A stretch of 64,000 nucleotides of DNA from Octopus sinensis. Its lineage: Eukaryota. Shown here in pieces: positions 2,415 to 61,706 of the stretch. Within the stretch, counting starts at the first letter, position 1. Every line of letters begins with the position of its first letter. The DNA is taken from positions 54,746,001-54,810,000 of the forward strand of contig NC_043010.1 in the NCBI RefSeq assembly GCF_006345805.1, read 5' to 3'. The translations under genes and the position numbers were made by a program. The notes beneath the pieces are model-generated. The model had not been told where the DNA came from. It saw nothing but the letters and a program-made list of their open reading frames with translations, and searched no databases.

Positions 2415-3130
<716 letters not shown>

Positions 3131-4080
3131 AGACAGATGGATAGATAAACAGACTGACAAACAGGTACATACATATATTCATATATAGCTCTGTATACGA
3201 TACATATATATCATATATAGAAACGCGCACCGACATGTATATAAGCACATATACACACATTTCAAAGTGCTTTGAGTACAAGTCAGGTATTCAAGATGCA
3301 CGTGCGTCTATAAAGAGTGCATGTATATAAACAAATTTCTTTAACGTATATAAATTGCACCAATATATCTTTCTCGAATAAATACTACGGAAAGCGATGC
3401 AGATTGGACACTGTTTCGTACATTTAATTATTATTATTAATTTTCTGTTTTCATATAGTTTTATATTTCAATGTAAGTGATATTTAGTTTTCACAGTAAT
3501 CATACAAACACAGGGACATACATATGCATGGACTGTGCACGCACACACGGAAATAATAATCAACGTAAATCGAATCGATTTATTATGAATGATTGCAGCG
3601 ATTGCCAGAAAGTAATATATAATAATAATATATATATATAAGTTAAACTTATAACAAAGATAATTAAACAAATATTTTATTTATTGCGTATGTTTATTTC
3701 TCGACAACAATAGAACATCTATGTACTTATAGATATATACTTGTGTACATAAATATAAATGATATATACATATATACGCGTGCATACACGCACATACACA
3801 AATAACTAAATATGTATATACATATATGTTTATATTCGTATATATTCATATATACGTTTGTGTATCAGTTTGTGAAGATGTAGATAATTATATATACATG
3901 TTTCTTTTCTGGTTTATTCCGCAATAAATCGGAAATCTTAAATGGTAGCGGCAGTGATAGTCAGATTGTTTTTATTGATTGTTTACAAATGGGAAATTAT
4001 AAGAACTCACATGATAGCCTTTTTTCCCATGAGAACTATAGTGAATAGAAAACGCATTTATATATACATACATACATATA

Positions 4081-6926: not shown

Positions 6927-7370
6927 AGGGTTGTGACCTAGCAGAATCGTTAGCACGCAGGAGAAATTACTTAGCGGCATTTAGTCCCTTATTTCTGAGT
7001 TTAAATTCCATCGAGGTCGACTTTGCCTTACGTCATTTCGGGGGCGAAATGCCTAGCAGTATTTCGTCTGTGTTTACGTTCTGAGTTCAAATTCCGCCGA
7101 GGTCGACTGTGCTTTTCATCCTTTCGGTGTCGATAAATTAAGTACCAGTTACGTACTGGGGTCGATGTAATCGACTTAATACCTTTGTCTGTCCTTGTTT
7201 GTCCTCTCTATGTTTAGCCCCTTGTAGGCAATAAAGAAATAAGAATAAATCGCACGCCGGGGGAAAGGCTTAGCAGCATTTCATCTCTCAACGGTCTGAG
7301 TTAAAATTCTGCCGAAATTGACGTTGCCTTCTTTTCTATGTCGGCTGAGCACTTGGATCGATGTAAAAGT
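6927..7370 (+). mobile_element. SINE-C cluster (three partial or nested copies)
   Basis: Repeated TTCTGAGTTCAAATTCCGCCGAGGTCGACT...TTTCATCCTTTCGG.GTCGATAAATTAAGTACCAG core; the youngest copy 7044-7240 ends AATAAAGAAATA. Confidence 0.85.
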
Positions 7371-13946: not shown

Positions 13947-14499
13947 ATTCGATTAGATCGACCTCAGTACGCAACTGGTACTTAATTTATCGACTCCGAA
14001 AGGATAAAAGGTGAAGTCAAACTCAGCGGAATATGAACTAAGAACGTAAAGACAGACGAAATACTGCTTAGCATTTCGCCAGGCAGGTTAACGTTTCTTA
14101 TTTCGTTTCTACCTATAAGGGGCTAAACACAGAGGGGACAAACAAGGATAGACAAACGGATTAAATCGATTATATCGACTCCAGTGCGTAACTGGTACTT
14201 GTTTAGTCGACCCCGAAAAGATGAAAGGTAAAGTTGACCTCGGCGGAATTTGAACTCAGAACGTAACGGCAGACGAAATACCTATTTCTTAACTACCCAC
14301 AAGGGACAAACAAGGACAGACAAACGGATTAAGTCGATTATATAGACCCCAGTGCGTAACTGGTACTTATCTAATCGACCCCGAAAGGATGAAAGGCAAA
14401 GTCGACCTCGGTGGAATTTGAACTCAGAACGTAACGGCAGACGAAATACTGCTAAGCATTTCGCCCGGCATGCTAACGTTTCTAACAGCTCACCGCCTT
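13947..14499 (-). mobile_element. SINE-C triple tandem or nested array
   Basis: Units 14283-14499, 14099-14282 and 13947-14098 in the same orientation. Confidence 0.9.
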
Positions 14500-16119: not shown

Positions 16120-16163
16120 TTTTTGCTATATATATATATAAATAGATAGATATAGATAGACAT

Positions 16164-16237
<74 letters not shown>

Positions 16238-21412: not shown

Positions 21413-21481
<69 letters not shown>

Positions 21482-28510: not shown

Positions 28511-30000
28511 TCACAGTGATTGCGATGTATTTACCTGACGAAATAACTACAACAACCATTGTTAAATACAATTCTATCGACTGAAAGTGACACAAGTCTT
28601 ATCTTCTTTCCGTTTAAGTGTTCTGCTTTTCCTTTTTTATATACCCTCTGATACTTTCTCGCTTTTTTTTTCCCCTAGAAGATGACCATCTTATACTCTA
28701 AGATATGTTACTAGGCAGAAACTCATACCCAAGACACAAGTGTATGAAAGCCATTGTCTTAAATGCAAATTTTAAGAGAGTTTCACATTAATTTAAAATC
28801 TAAAATTCGATCATTGAAAATTGTATACGCTGTGAAAAACATTTAGATATAGAAAAAATACAATATAGAAGAGAACCAAAATTAAATTACACTCTAATTT
28901 TTAAGTTCAAACACGGCAGAATTCATTCAGGAATTAGGGAAAAAGACTTTAAAATGTTGGAGTAGAAGAGAAAAGAGGTTGAATATAAGTGAGAAAGTGG
29001 GGATGGAATCAATAAAAAAATAAAGAGGCATGTTCTCTATCTGAACGATTCGATTCTTGATGCAAGTATATTAAAATAAAAAAGAATATCCATAAATACA
29101 TGCATATGATCGTCGTTTACCGTCCATTTTCGAAGCTGGGATGGTGTCTACGATTGAATGTCTTATCTAACGCCAACTGCTTAACTATGAGGTTTTACGT
29201 GCAACAACGCAAGCAAAATCACCAAGTAACTTGCAAGGCGCAGAATCTTCATATAAGATGGGGGGGTGTTATTGCAGGAGTTGGTTTTGTGTCAGGCGAT
29301 AAATTGCTAAACGGGGTGGGTTGGGGGTAGGGCAGAAATGGTTCACATTCTGTAGATGAGATACTTGGCGAACTCAGTCGGAGAAAGATCGTGAGAAGAT
29401 TCTAGTGGAGATGTGCCAGTGCTTTTCACAAATGTACGAGAAGCTGAATGCAAGCTGGGTGGTACAGAAAACAGGGTTAGTGAGTAGGGGTTCACGAAAG
29501 AGAAATAGGAGAGCGAGGGAAATGAGAAGCGAAGGAAGAGGCAATGAATGGTGAACATGGGAATAAAGGGGAACAGAAGGTTAGCAATGATACAATTGTC
29601 AGGGAAGGACAGGAGATATAGATGACAAAACTGCTTGGGCTGCAGAGAATGAGGGAGAAACAAGCGTAGTGCACGATGTTTTGTAGCTTAGTTCATTAAT
29701 ATGGGATGGGGAATGTGGGTAACATGTTGGTAGAGTACCCACATTTCTCAGCGCTTCCAGTACTCAGTTTCCTTGATGTAGGCGGGTTTTCTCATGAATC
29801 AAAAACCGCCAGACATATGCTCCGTAAGACCCAACATCTTGAGATTGCCCCCACAACGGCATCCCTCGACTCCTTCTGTCTCCCACTCCCGTCTGTGTTG
29901 TCCATTTTAACCGCTCACCATTTGTATATGCATCTCACGCCCCAAAGGAAAAATGTTAGATTTCTTTTTACTACTACCGTATATGTTCAACCCTATATGT

Positions 30001-31325
30001 GTCGGCACTCACTTTGATCCCTGTCGGCACCCCTCTTTGATCTTTGTCGGCACCCTCTTTGATCTATGTCGGCACCCCTCTTTGATCTCTGTCGGCAACC
30101 TCTTTGATCTTTGTCGGCACCCTCTTTGATCTATGTCGGCACCCCTCTTTGATCTTTGTCGACACCCTCTTTGATCTATGTCGGCACCCCTCTTTGATCT
30201 CTGTCGGCAACCTCTTTGATCTTTGTCAGCACCCTCGTTGATCTATGTCGGCACCCCTCTTTGATCTTTGTCAGCACCCTCTTTGATCTATGTCGGCACC
30301 CCTCTTTGATCTCTGTCGGAAAACTCTTTGATCTCTGTCGGGAACCTCTTTGATCTTTGTCGGCACCCTCTTTGATCTATGTCGATACCCCTCTTTGATC
30401 TCTGTCGGCACCCTCTTTGATCTATGTCGGCACCCCTCTTTGATCTCTGTCGGCAACCTCTTTGATCTATGTCGGCACCCCTCTTTGATCTCTGTCGGCA
30501 AACTCTTTGATCTCTGTCGGCACCCCTCTGATCTTTGTCGGCACCCTTTTGATCTCTGTCGGTACCCTCTTTGATCTCTGTCGGCACCCCCTTTGATCTC
30601 TGTCGGCACCCCCTTTCATCTATGTCGACACCCCTCTTTGATCTATGTCGACACCCCTCTTTGATCTCTGTCGGCAAACCCTTTGATCGATGTCGGCACC
30701 CCTCTTTGACCTATGTCGGCACCCACTTTGATCGATGTCGACACCCCCTTTGATCTCTGTCGACACCCCTCTTTGATCTCTGTCGGCACCCCCTTTGATC
30801 TATGTCGACACCCCTCTTTGATCTCTGTCGGCACCCCTCTTTGATCTATGTCGGCACCCCTCTTTGATCTCTGTCGGCACCCCTCTTTGACCTATGCCGG
30901 CACCCCTCTTTGATCTCTGTCGGCACCCCTCTTTGATCTCTGTCGGCACCCCCTTTGATCTCTATCGGCACCCCTCTTTAATCTCTGTCGGCATCCCCTT
31001 TGATCTATGTCGACACCCCTCTTTGATCTATGTCAGCACCCCTTTGATCTCTTTGGGCACCCCTCTTTGACCTATGTCGGCACCCCTCTTTGACCTCTGC
31101 CGGCACCCCGTTTGATCTCTGTCGGCACCCTTTTTGATCTCTGTCGGCACCCCTTTTTGATCTCTTTCGGCACCCCTTTTGATGTATGTCGGCACCCGTC
31201 TTTGATCTCTGTCGGCACACCCCTTTGATCTCTGTCGACACCCCACTTTGATCTCTCTTGACACCCCCTTTAATCTCTGTCGGCACCCTCTTTCATCTCT
31301 TCTGCGAATCCTCTTTGATCTTTTT
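30001..31325. repeat. 22/23-bp minisatellite GTCGGCACCC(C)TCTTTGATCT(A/C/T)T, roughly 58 units (estimated from length)
   Basis: Direct reading; contiguous units without spacers. Confidence 0.95.
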
Positions 31326-31516
31326 CGGCACAACCGTACCCTTCTTATTGACTCAATTTTTTTCAATTCATACAAGACAGATGCCCAAACGCAAACCTGG
31401 AAATACATACTACTACTGGAAAGCACAGTTTAAATGTGAAAGTGGACGAGCGAGCTTTATACTCTATTCTACTATGTTCTTAACAGAATATACTATAATT
31501 ATATATATACATATAT

Positions 31517-35860: not shown

Positions 35861-36744
35861 CGTATGCGCGGGTGTATGTATGTGTGTGTAGCTGTGTATG
35901 TGTATCTGTAACATTAGAGGTTTGGCGAAGGAGCGCGATGAAATAAGTTCTGGGGTCCATTTCTTCGAATAAAACCCTTCCAGGCAGTGCTCCAGCACAA
36001 CCGCAATCAAGTACCTGAAACAAGTAAAAGAATAATTGAAGGAAGCAATAAATATACATAATCAGCTCGCTGTCAGCTGCCAAAAGCATAAAATATCAGA
36101 ACATGGAATAGAAAACTATAAATACATTGAGAACGTATGTATATGTAAAAGAGAAAGAAATTTAGACACAGACGGAAGCCAAGAACGAGCAGACAAAACG
36201 TTGAAATTTGACTATAAGATTGCTTATGCACAATCCTTCATTTTTACCAACGTCTGCACTCAGAGACGCGCACATATAATAATGTACATACATAAAAACG
36301 CACACATGGACATATACACTCCTTACATACACATAAGCGCTCACAGAAACACATACAATCACACACATGGATCGACAGAAGTTCGTAAAAAATAAAATGT
36401 AATATATTTTAAAATAATAAATACAGAACAAATTACAAATCTAAAGCAAAAAGTTTCAATTGCTTCACTGCATTCAATTGCCATTTGCATATTTTTTACT
36501 CCATTAAAATTTACGTTTCCATATACCCATTTTTCTGAGAATGTCCATTTAGTGCAAGAAATTATAGTCTAAAATAGAATTCTCATACGCAGGGAATGTA
36601 AGTCAATACAAATATATGTGTGTGTGTGTGTGTGTGTCTACATGCTTGATTTTTTGTATATATAAGTATGAATATATGCATATGCGCCTATGTGTATACA
36701 TATATGAATATAAGTTTATAGATCTATCTGTCTGTATCTATCTA

Positions 36745-36818
<74 letters not shown>

Positions 36819-40541: not shown

Positions 40542-40745
40542 TATATACATATAAGTAATATTGTATTTCTATAGATGTATAGACACGGGCATACTTACAC
40601 AGTGTAGAGACATACTGAAAATATCACGCAAATCTTAGGATTAACAGAATATAAAAGTGGTTTAGAAATGTTAACGTACTGACATAAGACATACATAGCT
40701 TAATAATCTATCTAACTCCCTGCCTCTATTTTCCTATCTCTTTTT

Positions 40746-40748
40746 CTG

Positions 40749-40814
<66 letters not shown>

Positions 40815-40831
40815 CATCTATCTATGTATCC

Positions 40832-40862
<31 letters not shown>

Positions 40863-42238
40863 GTGGAAAGGATGCGTCCCGATGGTCAGGCGATCCATTT
40901 GCTGTCAACACCCGTTAAAAGGAGGGCTGGGCATGCCGTGGTTGATGATGCGCAGACACGCGCTGAGACTGCGACATCTCTGGCTCTATGTAGACGACGG
41001 TGAACAGGTGTGGTCGCCGTTTGTGAGGCACGCTTTCCCGCAGCTCGTCTCCATGACCGAACTGCAGTCGTGGATCAAAAAGAGGCCGAGGAAGGGCGAA
41101 TGGCACCGCGAGTGTCGCGTTGCTCTCAAGCAACTCTGCCGTCCTGGGTCGACCTTAAGTGACTTCAACACAACCAAAGCATTCTATAGGGGTTTAGTGG
41201 AGGGGAGGTACGACGACGAGCTCGGGGCGAACCTGGACGTCGACGAGGAGTACCTGACCCGCCTGTTCGGGACGACTTTCGGGCCAGGGCCCATGGACAA
41301 CTTCCAGAGATCCCTGGCCTGGCAGTGCTACCGAGAAGCGCTACCCGTTCGGGATAAGCTCTACAGACACGGCTCGAGAAACACGGGGCCGACCTGCCCG
41401 AGATGCGGTCAGAGCGACGAAACCGTTCTGCACGCACTCGTTCAGTGTCCAACAATTTCCGACCTGTGGCTTATGTCGAACAACTGCTGTCACGTGTGGG
41501 ACGAGTCGGTTTATCAGCTGAGTCTATCGTCAATATTGTCACGCCTCCTCCTTCAAACGGGAAGGAAGAGCTATTTTCATCATCCTTGTGGCTATGGCGA
41601 AAGAATGTATCTGGTGGACGCGTCTGAAAGGATTGGAGACAAACACTTTCCTCTCTGGTCAATCTCTCATCAACTTCTTCAAGTACCCTTGAAGAGGAAA
41701 GTGAGAGTAGAGAGGCAAGTTTTGTCTAGCGAATGTTTTAAAAAAAGATGGGTGAATGTAGCAAGAATGGCACGTATGAATGACGAAGCCACCTTGAGCA
41801 TAGTCCTATGAACCCAGAAATCGAAAACAGAGAGTTGCTTATTTGCAAAAAAAAAAAAAAAAAAAAAAAAAGATATATAAAATGTGACTCATTGACCGAG
41901 GTTACCGTGGTCTTTTCCGCAGGCTTTTCTTTCCACGGGTAAACCTCACCTGTCCTCCCCTTTACACTTCATATTGACATTTCTGTGATAACGATCCCTA
42001 TTGATCATTTTTTTTCCTCTCCCCCCCCTTTTTTTTTTTTTTTTTAACCCCCCTTATTTTTGTCCTCTTTCTCTCCTTTTACGATCCCTTTTGATCGAAC
42101 CTCCCCCTTCCCCCCCCTTTTTTTTTTTTTTTTTTTTAATACCTTCAAAAGAAAAGCTCTACCTTGTAATTTGTTCTATCTGTGTGCAGCCCTGTGTGGC
42201 TAATAAAGAAACATATCTATCTATCTCTCTATCTATCT

Positions 42239-42288
<50 letters not shown>

Positions 42289-42304
42289 CTCTATCTATCT
42301 ATCC

Positions 42305-42378
<74 letters not shown>

Positions 42379-42379
42379 C

Positions 42380-42410
<31 letters not shown>

Positions 42411-42442
42411 CTCTATCTATCTATCTATCTATCTATCTATCC

Positions 42443-42508
<66 letters not shown>

Positions 42509-42537
42509 CTCTATCTATCTATCTATCTATCTATCCC

Positions 42538-42578
<41 letters not shown>

Positions 42579-42631
42579 CATCTATCTATCTATCTATCTA
42601 TCTATCCTCTATCTATCTATCTATCTATCTG
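40746..42631. repeat. (CTAT)n array split by Tx1 copy 2 (40746-40861 and 42214-42631)
   Basis: Direct reading. Confidence 0.95.
40862..42213 (+). mobile_element. Tx1-clade non-LTR retrotransposon copy 2, 5'-truncated (ORF2 C-terminus plus ~400-bp 3'UTR)
   Basis: WKGCVPMVRRSICCQHPLKGGLGMP (FLW.G..V.R...GGLG.P) and CCHC finger CPRCGQSDETVLHALVQC; three 1-bp deletions; ends AATAAAGAAACA. Confidence 0.9.
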
Positions 42632-54126: not shown

Positions 54127-54195
<69 letters not shown>

Positions 54196-54201
54196 CATCT
54201 T

Positions 54202-55660
54202 GAAACTGTCCCTAAAAGGTCGAGCGGAGGTGGCGAACACGTACATCGCGTCCGTCATCTACTACCGCCTGACCGTCGTACCTTGTCCCGACCCTACCAT
54301 CACCAAACTACAACACATCCTCTTTCGCTTCTTGTGGAAAGGATGCGTCCCGATGGTCAGGCGATCCATTTGCTGTCAACACCCGTTAAAAGGAGGGCTG
54401 GGCATGCCGTGGTTGATGATGCGCAGACACGCGCTGAGACTGCGACATCTCTGGCTCTATGTAGACGACGGTGAACAGGTGTGGTCGCCGTTTGTGAGGC
54501 ACGCTTTCCCGCAGCTCGTCTCCATGACCGAACTGCAGTCGTGGATCAAAAAGAGGCCGAGGAAGGGCGAATGGCACCGCGAGTGTCGCGTTGCTCTCAA
54601 GCAACTCTGCCGTCCTGGGTCGACCTTAAGTGACTTCAACACAACCAAAGCATTCTATAGGGGTTTAGTGGAGGGGAGGTACGACGACGAGCTCGGGTCG
54701 AACCTGGACGTCGACGAGGAGTACCTGACCCGCCTGTTCAGGACGACTTTCGGGCCAGGGCCCATGGACAACTTCCAGAGATCCCTGGCCTGGCAGTGCT
54801 ACCGAGAAGCGCTACCCGTTCGGGATAAGCTCTACAGACACGGCTCGAGAACACGGGGCTGACCTGCCCGAGATGCGGTCAGAGCGACGAAACCGTTCTG
54901 CACGCACTCGTTCAGTGTCCAACAATTTCCGACCTGTGGGCTTGTGTCGAACAACTGCTGTCACGTGTGGGACGAGTCGGTTTATCAGCTGAGTCTATCG
55001 TCAATATTGTCACGCCTCCTCCTTCAAACGGGAAGGAAGAGCTATTTTCATCATCCTTGTGGCTATGGCGAAAGAATGTATCTGGTGGACGCGTCTGAAA
55101 GGATTGGAGACAAACACTTTCCTCTCTGGTCAATCTCTCATCAACTACTTCAAGTACCACTTGAAAAGGAAAGTGAGAGTAGAGAGGCAAGTTTTGTCTA
55201 GCGAATGTTTTAAAAAAAGATGGGTGAATGTTGCAAGAATGGCACGTATGAATGACGAAGCCACCTTGAGCATAGTCCTATGAACCCAGAAATCGAAAAC
55301 AGAGAGTTGCTTATTTGCAAAAAAAAAAAAAAAAAAGAAATATAAAATGTGACTTCATTGACCGAGGTTACCGTGGTCTTTTCCGTAGGCTTTTCTTTCC
55401 ACGGGTAAACCTCCCCTGTCCTCCCCTTTACACTTCATATTGACATTTCTGTGATAACGATCCCTATTGATCAATTTTTTTTTTCCTCCCCCCCTTTTTT
55501 TTAACCCCCCCTTTTTTGTCCTCTTTCTCTCCTTTTACGATCCCTTTTGATCGAAACTCCCCCTTCCCCCCCCTTTTTTTTTTCTAACCCTTCAAAAGAA
55601 AAGCTCTACCTTGTAATTTGTTCTATCTGTGTGCAGCCCTGTGTGGCTAATAAAGAAACA
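54202..55660 (+). mobile_element. Tx1-clade non-LTR retrotransposon copy 3, 5'-truncated, with 16-bp TSD
   Basis: KLSLKGRAEVANTYIASVIYYRLTVVPCP...LFRFLWKG...GGLGMP; TSD TATCTATCTACATCTT at 54186-54201 and 55661-55676; ~99% identical to copy 2. Confidence 0.92.
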
Positions 55661-55875
55661 TATCTATCTACATCTTATTCTCTTTCTCTCTCTTGCATAT
55701 ACTTACATATATACACTTATTTATTATGATAATAATAATCATATATATGTATACATCATAATAATTATATAAATATATATATATAATAATTATACATATA
55801 TATATATATATATATATATGTTTGTATATATATATATATACATATATAAACAGAGAGAGAGAGAAATAGATGTAC

Positions 55876-59372: not shown

Positions 59373-60096
59373 TCAACGGTTAAATCTAAATGATCAAGGC
59401 TAGAATACAGCTGATCTTTGGTGTGCTGGTCAGACTTGACCTGCGGCTAAGCAACAACAAAAATTAACAGAGACAAAGAGCAATGCCAAAAACACGAATG
59501 AATCACTCTCAGACTAAACTGATTAGAGATTTCAATGATTTTTCTTTTACCCATTATTCTTTTTTAGCCTATGGCATTTTTATTTTTACAAAGTTAACAA
59601 TGAGTCTCCTTTCAAAAAGTATTCCCAACATTTATTCATTTATTTATTTTTATAATAATTCATTTATTTATATATTTATTTAATTATAATTTATTTTGTT
59701 ATTTAGGTTTTTGCTGGTCTTTCGTCTGTTTTAATAACATTCTCTTTGACTGCTGCTTTCATCTGTTTGAAGCCTTCACAATTGATTAGTTCACTTCTGT
59801 ATCTTACACTATTTTTACTTCATATTCATTTATGAAATATGTTTACAGCTAATTAATCCTCTTGTGTTCCTTTTGTACTCGTATAAATTAATGTAAGCTG
59901 TGTCTTAGGATCATAATGTTTGGCCCGTCATTAAGGTAATTATATTTCTACAGATATAGGGAGCACAAAGTCTGCACTACGTGACACAATATAATGATGT
60001 AATTTTTGTTACATCTTCAAGCAAGTTCTCATTAATTACATCACTAATAATAGTGGTAATGATAACACCACGACCACCACCAATATTAGTGGTAGT

Positions 60097-60198
60097 GATG
60101 ATGATGATGAAGATGATGATGATTATATTGTTTGATGATGATGATATTGCTGATGATGATGATATAGATGATATTGATGATGATATTGATGATAATGA

Positions 60199-60233
<35 letters not shown>

Positions 60234-60395
60234 AAGATGATGATGAAGATGATGATGAAGATGATGATGATGATGATGATGGCGATGGCGATGACGATGA
60301 CGATGATGATGATGATGATGATGATAAAGATGATGATGATGATGATGATGATGATGACGACGATGATGACGATGATGATGATGATGATGATGATA
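60097..60395. repeat. (GAT)n trinucleotide tract
   Basis: Direct reading. Confidence 0.95.
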
Positions 60396-60945: not shown

Positions 60946-60983
<38 letters not shown>

Positions 60984-60985
<2 letters not shown>

Positions 60986-61195
60986 AAGGTTTTTCAAACG
61001 ATGAATAGTTTGCGTAAACCATGGTCCGTTTTGTTCTCTTACTTTATTATCATCTTATAATCCATCTCATAATAACGACTTTTATGACTCGTATTACTAC
61101 CTCAGTCAATCTAAATGTATATATTTGTCGTTACCTGCCATAAATAGCCTTTTTTATTTGCAATGTGCATTTTCATTGGATTTTCATATTTTACT

Positions 61196-61243
<48 letters not shown>

Positions 61244-61304
61244 TTAATATTAGGGAAATTATTTCCGAGTCCACAGGGGAGAGAAATTCAATTTCTCGCT
61301 GTAT

Positions 61305-61347
<43 letters not shown>

Positions 61348-61559
61348 AAGGTTTTTCAAACGATGAATAGTTTGCGTAAACCATGGTCCGTTTTGTTCTC
61401 TTACTTTATTATCATCTTATAATCCATCTCATAATAACGACTTTTATGACTCGTATTACTACCTCAGTCAATCTAAATGTATATATTTGTCGTTACCTGC
61501 CATAAATAGCCTTTTTTATTTGCAATGTGCATTTTCATTGGATTTTCATATTTTACTCC

Positions 61560-61593
<34 letters not shown>

Positions 61594-61667
61594 ATATATA
61601 TAATTATTAATATTAGGGAAATTATTTCCGAGTCCACAGGGGAGAGAAATTCAATTTCTCGCTGTAT

Positions 61668-61700
<33 letters not shown>
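60984..61700. repeat. Tandem duplication, ~362-bp period, bounded by (TA)n
   Basis: 60984-61311 and 61346-61674 look identical outside the TA runs. Confidence 0.9.

Positions 61701-61706
<6 letters not shown>

What the first reader, a model, noticed from the sequence alone, without database searches (positions are those of the whole stretch)
40746..42631. Candidate (ATCT)n/(GATA)n-specific Tx1 retrotransposon: three independent insertions, all inside GATA arrays
Seen: three copies of one LINE (2603-2760 minus, 40862-42213, 54202-55660) with different 5' truncation points (~0.16, 1.35 and 1.46 kb). Each has (CTAT)n upstream, each is on the strand reading CTAT, and each ends at the same base, AATAAAGAAACA|TATCTATCTA, with no poly(A). 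About three of the six GATA arrays in the window are occupied and no copy lies elsewhere. Known: the ORF2 motifs (LSxxGR..N, FLW.G, GGLG.P, CCHC finger) are L1/Tx1-type, and the Tx1 clade contains sequence-specific families (Tx1L/Tx2L, Keno, Dewa, and Kibi/Koshi on TC/TTC-type microsatellites). Inference: this is a Tx1 family whose APE endonuclease targets a tetranucleotide GATA repeat. I do not recall such a family being described, but could not check.
Basis: partly seen in the sequence, partly recalled or inferred. Interest (0 to 1): 0.88.

Follow-up and report, generated by a model that had tools for sequence, protein, structure and literature searches.

The report
Octopus LINE that targets GATA microsatellites
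Three broken copies of one jumping gene (an L1/Tx1-type LINE of an octopus-like cephalopod) each sit inside a pre-existing GATA/CTAT microsatellite in the same orientation and register, so this looks like a new microsatellite-targeting LINE family, a kind of element already known for other repeat units.

Summary
The window carries three 5'-truncated copies of one LINE (2603-~2760 minus; 40862-42213; 54202-55660). All three end at ...GGCTAATAAAGAAACA|TATCTATC, none has a poly(A) tail, and all read CTAT on the sense strand. GATA-type arrays make up only 2.2% of the window, so three of three insertions in arrays has P about 1e-5. Copy 3 has a 16-bp target-site duplication that runs into unique sequence. 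Copy 1 is flanked by a duplicated 40-nt variant block. So the arrays existed before insertion. ORF2 has a zf-RVT domain. A near full-length Argonauta relative has APE, RT and zf-RVT, and its best solved-structure match is human L1 ORF2p. The host is an octopod. The Tx1 assignment is plausible but was not tested by phylogeny. No copy in the window retains the endonuclease, so the claim that the APE sets the target cannot be tested here. Relatives share the conserved 3' module but end in TCTAT or (ATT)n and lie outside GATA arrays. This suggests that terminal RNA repeat units pairing with the nicked array contribute to targeting. Microsatellite-targeting Tx1 families are already known, including tetranucleotide (TTCC)n/(TTTC)n targets. 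I found no GATA target in the literature searched. Only three copies could be examined.

The parts
40734..40861 (+). Upstream half of the (CTAT)n array split by copy 2. It contains a TATCCTCTATC variant unit that also recurs in the downstream half.
   Evidence: TRF; sequence
40862..42213 (+). LINE copy 2, 5'-truncated (1.35 kb). It holds the ORF2 C-terminal part with the zf-RVT CCHC finger and a 3' UTR of about 400 nt that ends GGCTAATAAAGAAACA. There is no poly(A) tail.
   Evidence: blastn 96.4% to copy 3; ORF 40882-41811; tblastn with relatives
42214..42630 (+). Downstream half of the (TATC)n array, about 106 units. Its first 13 nt (TATCTATCTATCT) repeat the last 13 nt before the element, so the TSD is at least 13 bp.
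54127..54201 (+). (CTAT)17 array followed by CTACATCTT, upstream of copy 3. Positions 54186-54201 are the upstream TSD copy, TATCTATCTACATCTT.
54202..55660 (+). LINE copy 3, 5'-truncated (1.46 kb). It holds the ORF2 C-terminal 360 aa (two frameshifts), zf-RVT, and a 3' UTR with the same 3' terminus.
55661..55676 (+). Downstream TSD copy of copy 3, TATCTATCTACATCTT. It includes the non-repeat bases ACATCTT, which shows that the array and its edge existed before insertion.
   Evidence: direct reading
2603..2760 (-). LINE copy 1, only the last ~160 nt of the 3' UTR. It is older (87.7% identity) and has the same 3' terminus, GGCTAATAAAGAAACA|TATC.
2761..3147 (-). Array upstream (in the sense orientation) of copy 1. 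Positions 2808-2769 are a 40-nt variant block, ctgtctatctctctctatctatccatctacctacctatct.
2415..2602 (-). Array downstream (in the sense orientation) of copy 1. Positions 2579-2540 repeat the same 40-nt variant block. The duplicated stretch is about 60-70 bp, either a long TSD or a pre-existing higher-order repeat.
55630..55660 (+). Conserved 3'-terminal module (TGTGCAGCCCTGTGTGGCTAATAAAGAAACA) with a small hairpin (AGCC/GGCT) and an AATAAA signal 6 nt before the end. Octopod relatives and Argonauta tRNA-SINEs share it.
   Evidence: alignment A1
16130..16201 (-). Unoccupied GATA-type array (reads ATAG on +, that is CTAT on the minus strand).
21414..21481 (-). Unoccupied GATA-type array, 17 perfect units (AGAT on +).

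Best explanation
This is an L1/Tx1-type non-LTR retrotransposon of an octopod. It has an APE endonuclease, an RT and a C-terminal CCHC finger. Its 3' end is of the 'stringent' type: a conserved terminal module with an AATAAA signal and no poly(A) tail. It integrates by target-primed reverse transcription preferentially into (GATA)n/(CTAT)n microsatellites. The element's sense strand lies on the CTAT strand. The bottom strand is nicked inside the array, leaving a ...GATAGATA-3'OH primer. That primer pairs with one or more UAUC units at the very 3' end of the element RNA. cDNA synthesis then starts at ...GAAACA, which gives the invariant junction ACA|TATC. The second-strand nick is not at a fixed distance, since the TSDs are 9-16 bp, at least 13 bp and about 60 bp. 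Reverse transcription usually aborts, which gives 5'-truncated dead copies. I think target choice comes from primer-template pairing together with an endonuclease adapted to the same repeat, as in L1, where the T-rich nick site matches the poly(A) tail. Shown here: independent insertions, pre-existing arrays, fixed orientation and junction, and the domain type. Inferred: the nick position, the RNA 3' end and the contribution of the endonuclease.
For: Three copies with different 5' truncation points share an identical 3' junction. Arrays are 2.24% of the window, so P(3/3) is about 1e-5. Copy 3 has a 16-bp TSD, TATCTATCTACATCTT, that runs into unique sequence, and 15 further CTAT units lie upstream of the TSD. 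Copy 1 is flanked by an identical 40-nt variant block. The two half-arrays around copy 2 share the TATCCTCTATC variant. No older element end lies upstream of any of the three arrays, so they are not tails of earlier copies. zf-RVT is present in the window ORF. The Argonauta relative has APE + RVT_1 + zf-RVT, and its best PDB match is L1 ORF2p. The 3'-terminal ~30 nt are conserved across octopod relatives and shared with tRNA-SINEs. In Argonauta the SINE and LINE termini include TCTAT followed by variable flanks. Other relatives end in short or long (ATT)n. So short repeat units at the RNA terminus are a feature of this clade and differ between families, while ORF2 and the 3' module stay recognisably similar.
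Against: There are only three copies, all from one 64-kb window, and no further copies of this family could be retrieved. The RNA 3' end is unknown. In copy 3 the TATC units after ACA can all be assigned to the TSD, so an element-borne TATC unit is not demonstrated. The APE of this family is not available. A sequence-specific endonuclease alone would explain the same data. The ~60-bp duplication at copy 1 could be a pre-existing repeat and not a TSD.
Confidence: 0.6

Rival explanations
1. Target choice is set by the APE endonuclease alone, which recognises and nicks the (GATA)n duplex at one phase (bottom strand 5'-GATA^GATA-3'). The RNA terminus plays no part.
For: The junction phase is invariant in 3 of 3 copies and the orientation is fixed. 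In the published view, the endonuclease mainly determines target choice in Tx1 and R1 clade elements (PMC4494074 introduction; PMC3812793). Kibi, Koshi and the crocodilian Tx1 families show that Tx1 endonucleases can be microsatellite-specific.
Against: No APE sequence of this family is available, because all three copies are truncated. The constant phase is equally expected from primer-template pairing. Relatives carry TCTAT or (ATT)n at their own termini. TSD lengths vary widely (9-16, at least 13, about 60 bp), unlike strictly site-specific elements.
Confidence: 0.25
2. There is no targeting. The element carries a (TATC)n 3' tail or seeds a proto-microsatellite, and the arrays grew from tails or TSDs after insertion.
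For: LINE 3' ends are known sources of microsatellites (PMC3812793). Relatives carry (ATT)n tails: more than 25 units on L003, and a short tail that looks element-borne on the Argonauta copy. The array downstream of copy 2 (417 bp) is much longer than the upstream one (129 bp).
Against: All three copies have arrays upstream of their 5'-truncated ends, where an element tail cannot contribute. In copy 3 the upstream array (17 units) extends 15 units beyond the TSD, while the downstream side has only the 2.25 TSD units followed by unique sequence. Variant units or blocks are shared between the upstream and downstream halves at copies 1 and 2. No older element end precedes the arrays.
Confidence: 0.08
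3. The pattern is chance, passive retention in low-constraint repeat DNA, or a segmental duplication of one insertion.
For: The window is extremely rich in simple repeats (116 TRF rows). The sample is small and was chosen post hoc.
Against: The 5' truncation points, flanks and TSDs all differ, which excludes duplication. (TA)n arrays cover more of the window (4.4%) than GATA arrays (2.2%), yet hold no copy. Passive retention does not explain the identical junction and orientation.
Confidence: 0.04

Closest known systems
Kibi (TC)n and Koshi (TTC)n, Tx1-clade LINEs of teleost fish (Kojima & Fujiwara 2004, as cited in PMC3812793 and PMC4494074)
   Same: They are APE-type LINEs of the L1/Tx1 group that insert in a fixed orientation into a simple-sequence microsatellite.
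   Different: Their targets are pure pyrimidine/purine di- or trinucleotides in vertebrates. Here the target is a mixed tetranucleotide (GATA/CTAT) and the host is a cephalopod. Clade membership of the octopod element was not tested by phylogeny.
Crocodilian Tx1 families (Tx1-1_Crp, Tx1-2_AMi and others) that prefer (TTCC)n/(TTTC)n (Kojima 2015, PMC4494074)
   Same: They have a tetranucleotide microsatellite as preferred target, and they belong to a LINE group that also mobilises SINEs sharing its 3' tail.
   Different: The repeat unit and the host differ. Their preference was established on genome-wide flanks (a criterion of more than 20% of flanks). Here only three copies support it.
Waldo (ACAY)n and Mino (AC)n of the R1 clade; Dong (TAA)n of the R4 clade; Togen (TG)n of the NeSL clade (PMC3812793, PMC4640811)
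   Same: They are microsatellite-specific non-LTR retrotransposons. Waldo shows that a 4-nt unit can be a target.
   Different: They belong to other clades. Dong and Togen use a restriction-like endonuclease, not an APE. Their domain architecture lacks the L1/Tx1 zf-RVT C-terminus.
Stringent-type LINEs with a conserved 3' stem-loop and a short terminal tandem repeat, such as eel UnaL2 (TGTAA)n (from my own knowledge, not checked here)
   Same: They have a conserved 3'-terminal module shared with partner SINEs, no poly(A) tail, and short repeat units at the extreme 3' end that can pair or slip on the primer.
   Different: UnaL2 is in the L2 clade and is not reported to be microsatellite-specific. 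Here the terminal unit matches the array into which the element inserts.
Human L1 (ORF2p structures 8UW3, 8SXT, 9K6G)
   Same: It is the best solved-structure match of the Argonauta relative's ORF2 (E about 1e-12). The APE-RT layout is the same. The logic is the same too: the nicked target (a T-run) is complementary to the RNA 3' tail (poly(A)).
   Different: L1 uses poly(A) and a loose TTTT/A consensus. The relative's ORF1 has a CCHC knuckle and no Pfam L1 ORF1 (Transposase_22) match.

Membership tests
L1 group of non-LTR retrotransposons (L1/Tx1 clades) | ORF2 has an N-terminal apurinic-like endonuclease (Exo_endo_phos). | tested here: inconclusive
   All three window copies are 5'-truncated and lack this region. 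It is present in the 61-62% identical Argonauta relative (PF03372, E = 5e-11; L1 endonuclease structure 2V0S hit).
L1 group of non-LTR retrotransposons (L1/Tx1 clades) | An RT domain followed by a C-terminal CCHC zinc-binding motif. | tested here: met
   zf-RVT PF13966 matches the window ORF at E = 4.5e-8. The motif CPRCGQSDETVLHALVQC can be read in copies 2 and 3. RVT_1 + zf-RVT are found in relatives P0001, P0004 and P0017 at 69-72% identity.
Tx1 clade | The RT groups with Tx1L, Keno, Kibi and Koshi, and not with L1, in a phylogeny. | not tested
   No named Tx1 or L1 reference sequences could be obtained, and the homologue lists carry no Tx1 names. There is indirect support only. In the 2026 O. 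vulgaris annotation, L1-Tx1 is the only L1-group superfamily among recently active LINEs (PMC13282606). The relative's ORF1 has a CCHC knuckle and no L1-type ORF1 Pfam match.
Target-specific (microsatellite-specific) LINE, by Kojima's operational criterion | The same kind of sequence is found in more than 20% of the flanks of the family's copies (PMC4494074 methods). | tested here: met
   3 of 3 copies lie in (CTAT)n, against 2.2% array content of the window. The sample is three copies from one window, not genome-wide.
Target-specific LINE | Insertion into a pre-existing target is shown by a TSD or an empty site. | tested here: met
   Copy 3 has a 16-bp TSD that spans the array edge. Copy 1 has a duplicated 40-nt variant block. 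Copy 2 has a TSD of at least 13 bp. No orthologous empty site was available.
Target-specific LINE | The endonuclease cleaves the target sequence specifically. | not testable with these tools
   This needs the family's APE, which is absent from the window and was not retrieved, and a nicking assay.
Stringent-type LINE/SINE partnership | A 3'-terminal module is conserved among LINE families and shared with SINEs. | tested here: met
   Alignment A1 has 22 invariant columns, concentrated in the last ~30 nt, across window copies, O. sinensis, Argonauta, a metagenome relative and Argonauta tRNA-SINEs. Nine SINE tails in L014/L015 carry it. The window holds a SINE with the tail GCAATAAAGAAAT at about 7100-7239.

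The most novel reading that the evidence does not exclude
In this octopod LINE clade, target choice may be carried largely by the last few nucleotides of the RNA and not by the protein. The conserved module ends at AAUAAAGAAA, and what follows differs between families: UAUC units, UCUAU or (AUU)n. Those terminal units could be copied from, or read through into, the progenitor's flank, because the AAUAAA signal sits only 6 nt from the end. They would pair with the nicked target. A family whose master copy lies in a GATA array would then keep homing to GATA arrays. That would be an RNA-templated, heritable and easily switchable microsatellite specificity.
Probability: 0.25. Interest if true: 0.7.

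Novelty: new member of a known kind. Interest (0 to 1): 0.45.

Why it matters
Microsatellite-homing LINEs show how a retrotransposon can multiply without hitting genes, and they are natural examples of sequence-directed TPRT. A GATA/CTAT-homing family would add a mixed-sequence tetranucleotide to the known targets, which are mostly homopurine/homopyrimidine or AC-type. It would also be the first such case I could find for cephalopods, whose genomes are about two-thirds repeats. It would split and seed GATA arrays and so affect microsatellite dynamics and marker loci. The close relatives share the 3' module but carry different terminal repeat units and lie in non-GATA sites. They offer a natural series for asking whether the endonuclease or RNA-primer pairing sets the target. 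That question bears on engineering LINE-based insertion tools.

Tried and rejected
(1) I scanned the JGI metagenome contigs for the 19-nt 3' end, TGTGGCTAATAAAGAAACA. The 7 hits were all chance matches in unrelated sequence.

(2) Protein-guided scans of the prokaryotic genome contigs and of viral contigs found nothing.

(3) I looked up the contigs that encode the closest protein relatives, at 64-80% identity (P0002, P0003, P0005). L011, L012 and L013 all stop before the element's 3' junction; L013 stops about 25 nt short of it. P0006 and P0016 (O. bimaculoides, 95% identical over 36 aa) are not on record. The window's own 309-aa ORF is not on record either, so the source species was not identified.

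(4) I hoped that names in the homologue lists would settle Tx1 versus L1. None of the 136 listed proteins carries such a name.

(5) The 393-nt 3' UTR as a whole folds no better than shuffles (z = -0.83). Only local hairpins recur, and I make no structural claim beyond those.

(6) A local alignment of the copy 1 flanks was swamped by the repeat. I defined the duplicated block by direct reading instead.

(7) I rejected segmental duplication of one insertion because the truncation points and flanks differ. I rejected the idea that the arrays are tails of older copies because no element end lies upstream of any array.

(8) I considered counting covariation in the small terminal hairpin on alignment A1. 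I dropped it because the loop length differs between families, so the columns are not in register.

Full report

Yes. A blastn of the longest copy against the whole window finds exactly three copies and nothing else. They are 54196-55665, 40862-42218 (96.4% identity over 1360 nt) and 2742-2598 on the minus strand (87.7% over 154 nt). Reading the sequence gives these element limits:
- Copy 3: 54202-55660.
- Copy 2: 40862/3-42213.
- Copy 1: 2603 to about 2760, minus strand.

Every copy ends ...CCCTGTGTGGCTAATAAAGAAACA and is followed at once by TATCTATCTA. None has a poly(A) tail. In the sense orientation each has (CTAT)n directly upstream. The 5' ends lie at three different positions of the element, so these are three separate, 5'-truncated insertions.

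TRF and a regex scan give six GATA-type arrays: 2415-3147, 16130-16201, 21414-21481, a degenerate one at 36722-36763, 40734-42630 and 54127-54196. Three are occupied. Arrays cover 1367 of 61021 non-element bases (2.24%). Three of three insertions in arrays has a chance of about 1.1e-5, or about 3e-6 with the shared orientation. (TA)n arrays cover more of the window (4.4%) and hold no copy.

**2. Were the arrays there before the element?**

This is the key point against the idea that the repeat is just the element's tail.

- **Copy 3.** It has a clean 16-bp target-site duplication, TATCTATCTACATCTT, at 54186-54201 and 55661-55676. The TSD contains the non-repeat bases ACATCTT. On the downstream side it is followed by unique sequence. 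On the upstream side 15 more CTAT units precede it. The insertion therefore hit the 3' edge of an existing (CTAT)17 array.
- **Copy 1.** An identical 40-nt variant block (ctgtctatctctctctatctatccatctacctacctatct) lies on both sides, at 2808-2769 and 2579-2540. It sits within a duplicated stretch of about 60-70 bp. This is either a long TSD or a pre-existing higher-order repeat. In both readings array sequence lay on both sides before insertion.
- **Copy 2.** The last 13 nt before the element equal the first 13 nt after it. Both half-arrays share the unusual unit TATCCTCTATC.

No element 3' end lies upstream of any of the three arrays, so the arrays are not tails of older copies.

**3. What is the element?**

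The ORF in copies 2 and 3 is the C-terminal 360 aa of a LINE ORF2.

Protein homologues are all cephalopod or cephalopod-derived: Argonauta hians, Octopus sinensis, O. bimaculoides, and short metagenome contigs at 64-80% identity. The host is therefore an octopod. The species could not be identified.

An Argonauta relative (L001/L014, 61-62% identical by BLASTP and tblastn) is nearly full length. Its ORF1 has a CX2CX4HX4C knuckle and no Pfam L1-ORF1 match. Its ORF2 has Exo_endo_phos, RVT_1 and zf-RVT. The N-terminal half of its ORF2, the part searched, matches human L1 ORF2p best among solved structures, at E about 1e-12.

This places the element in the L1 group. Assignment to the Tx1 clade is likely, because the 2026 O. 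vulgaris repeat annotation lists L1-Tx1 as the only L1-group superfamily among recently active LINEs (PMC13282606). I could not test it by phylogeny.

**4. The 3' end and the relatives**

The last ~30 nt (..TCTGTGT.C.GCCCTTGTGGCTAATAAAGAAA) are conserved among the window copies, an O. sinensis copy, two Argonauta LINE families, a metagenome relative and Argonauta tRNA-derived SINEs. This is a stringent-type 3' module shared between LINEs and SINEs. The module contains AATAAA only 6 nt from the end.

What follows the module differs by family:
- The window family has CA + TATC...
- One Argonauta LINE (L015) and seven of its SINE copies end TCTAT, followed by variable flanks. There the TCTAT is part of the element.
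- Another Argonauta LINE ends in a short AATTATTATTATTAT. A candidate 7-bp TSD, TTATACA, would make that tail element-borne (tentative).
- Metagenome relative L003 runs into more than 25 ATT units.
- The O. sinensis copy has no repeat at either flank.

None of these relatives lies in a GATA array. GATA association is therefore a property of the window family, not of the clade. Short repeat units at the extreme RNA terminus are a variable clade feature.

**5. Mechanism**

The data fit target-primed reverse transcription into the array. A bottom-strand nick leaves ...GATAGATA-3'OH, and cDNA synthesis begins at ...GAAACA.

It is equally what one expects if the RNA ends in one or more UAUC units that pair with the primer. 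The register would then be the same wherever the nick fell. In copy 3 the TATC units after ACA can be assigned either to the TSD (16 bp) or partly to the element (TSD down to 9 bp), so this cannot be resolved here.

TSD lengths vary (9-16, at least 13, about 60 bp), so the second nick is not at a fixed distance.

I therefore favour pairing plus a co-adapted endonuclease (0.6) over endonuclease-only specificity (0.25). Post-insertion array growth gets 0.08 and chance or passive retention 0.04. No APE of this family is available, so the endonuclease claim is untested.

**6. Comparison with what is known**

- The 2013 review PMC3812793 lists microsatellite targets for Waldo (ACAY), Mino (AC), Kibi (TC), Koshi (TTC) and Dong (TAA).
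- PMC4640811 adds Togen (TG) and some HERO families.
- PMC4494074 reports crocodilian Tx1 families that prefer (TTCC)n/(TTTC)n. Tetranucleotide microsatellite targets in the Tx1 clade are therefore already known.
- Four full-text searches for a GATA/ATCT/TCTA/TAGA-targeting LINE found nothing relevant.
- The O. vulgaris TE paper mentions no target preference.
- Repbase and Dfam could not be searched.

**7. Verdict**

This is best filed as a new member of a known kind: a microsatellite-homing L1/Tx1-type LINE with a new repeat unit and a new host group.

Interest is moderate (0.45). The targeting itself is not surprising to specialists. The clade's variable terminal repeat units do offer a tractable test of RNA-pairing against endonuclease-driven targeting.

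The main weakness is that there are only three copies, all from one window. Every attempt to retrieve more copies of this family failed.

Noticed in passing
window ~41545 and ~55017: Copies 2 and 3 share the same 1-nt frameshift, relative to all relatives, just after the zinc finger. In copy 3 the frame goes 2 to 1 at ~54850 and 1 to 3 at ~55017 (tblastn). Copy 2 returns to frame only through two further private indels. Their common source therefore already had a shifted ORF2 C-terminus. Either the last ~90 aa are dispensable or these copies were mobilised in trans.
   Followed up: partly
window ~7100-7239 (+): A SINE-like element ends ...CTCTATGTTTAGCCCCTTGTAGGCAATAAAGAAAT, which is the 3' module of the related 'AAAT' LINE families. 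It is followed by aagaataaatcg and is not in a GATA array. It is a likely partner SINE of a sister LINE family.
   Followed up: partly
window 14135-14449: A 168-bp unit is present 1.9 times (92% match). Its sequence resembles the body of the SINE at 7100-7200, read on the opposite strand.
   Followed up: no
window 30000-31331: A large minisatellite has about 59 copies of a 23-bp unit, TGTCGGCACCCCTCTTTGATCTC, with 45- and 112-bp higher-order periods.
   Followed up: no
window 60950-61706: A 362-bp unit is repeated 2.1 times at 99% identity. Each unit starts with a (TA)n run, which points to a very recent tandem duplication. Next to it lies a ~300-bp (TGA)n array at 60096-60394.
   Followed up: no
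window 41847-41871 and 55321-55337: A pure A-run (A25 in copy 2, A18 in copy 3) lies inside the 3' UTR about 40 nt after the ORF2 stop, followed by long T/C homopolymer runs. The 80% identical relative L013 has ordinary sequence at that position, so this is a family-specific expansion and not a former poly(A) tail.
   Followed up: partly
window 55368-55408 (and 41895-41935); L013 ~984-1022: A local hairpin in the 3' UTR (TTACCGTGG ... CCACGGGTAA) is kept in the 80% identical relative as a perfect 10-bp stem (TTAACCGTGG ... CCACGGTTAA). It recurs in the centroid fold, although the whole UTR folds no better than shuffles.
   Followed up: partly
L014 4900-5350 (Argonauta hians BAAFZT010000007.1): Three head-to-tail tRNA-derived SINE units are separated by the same short spacer (TTTGTCC). 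Each ends GGCTAATAGAGAAATC(T/C)AT, and they lie immediately upstream of the near full-length LINE. This looks like a tandem duplication of SINE plus spacer and not three separate insertions.
   Followed up: no
P0016 (O. bimaculoides A0A0L8GCS6): This annotated 386-aa protein starts with 36 aa that are 95% identical to the end of this LINE's ORF2. It ends in a region resembling the relative's ORF1. It is probably a gene model stitched from LINE pieces, and it shows that the family or a close one exists in O. bimaculoides.
   Followed up: partly
P0006 (NCBI 'MAG: Herbaspirillum sp.'): A protein 64% identical to this cephalopod LINE ORF2 is deposited as part of a bacterial metagenome-assembled genome. 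This is almost certainly host (cephalopod) DNA contaminating the bin.
   Followed up: no
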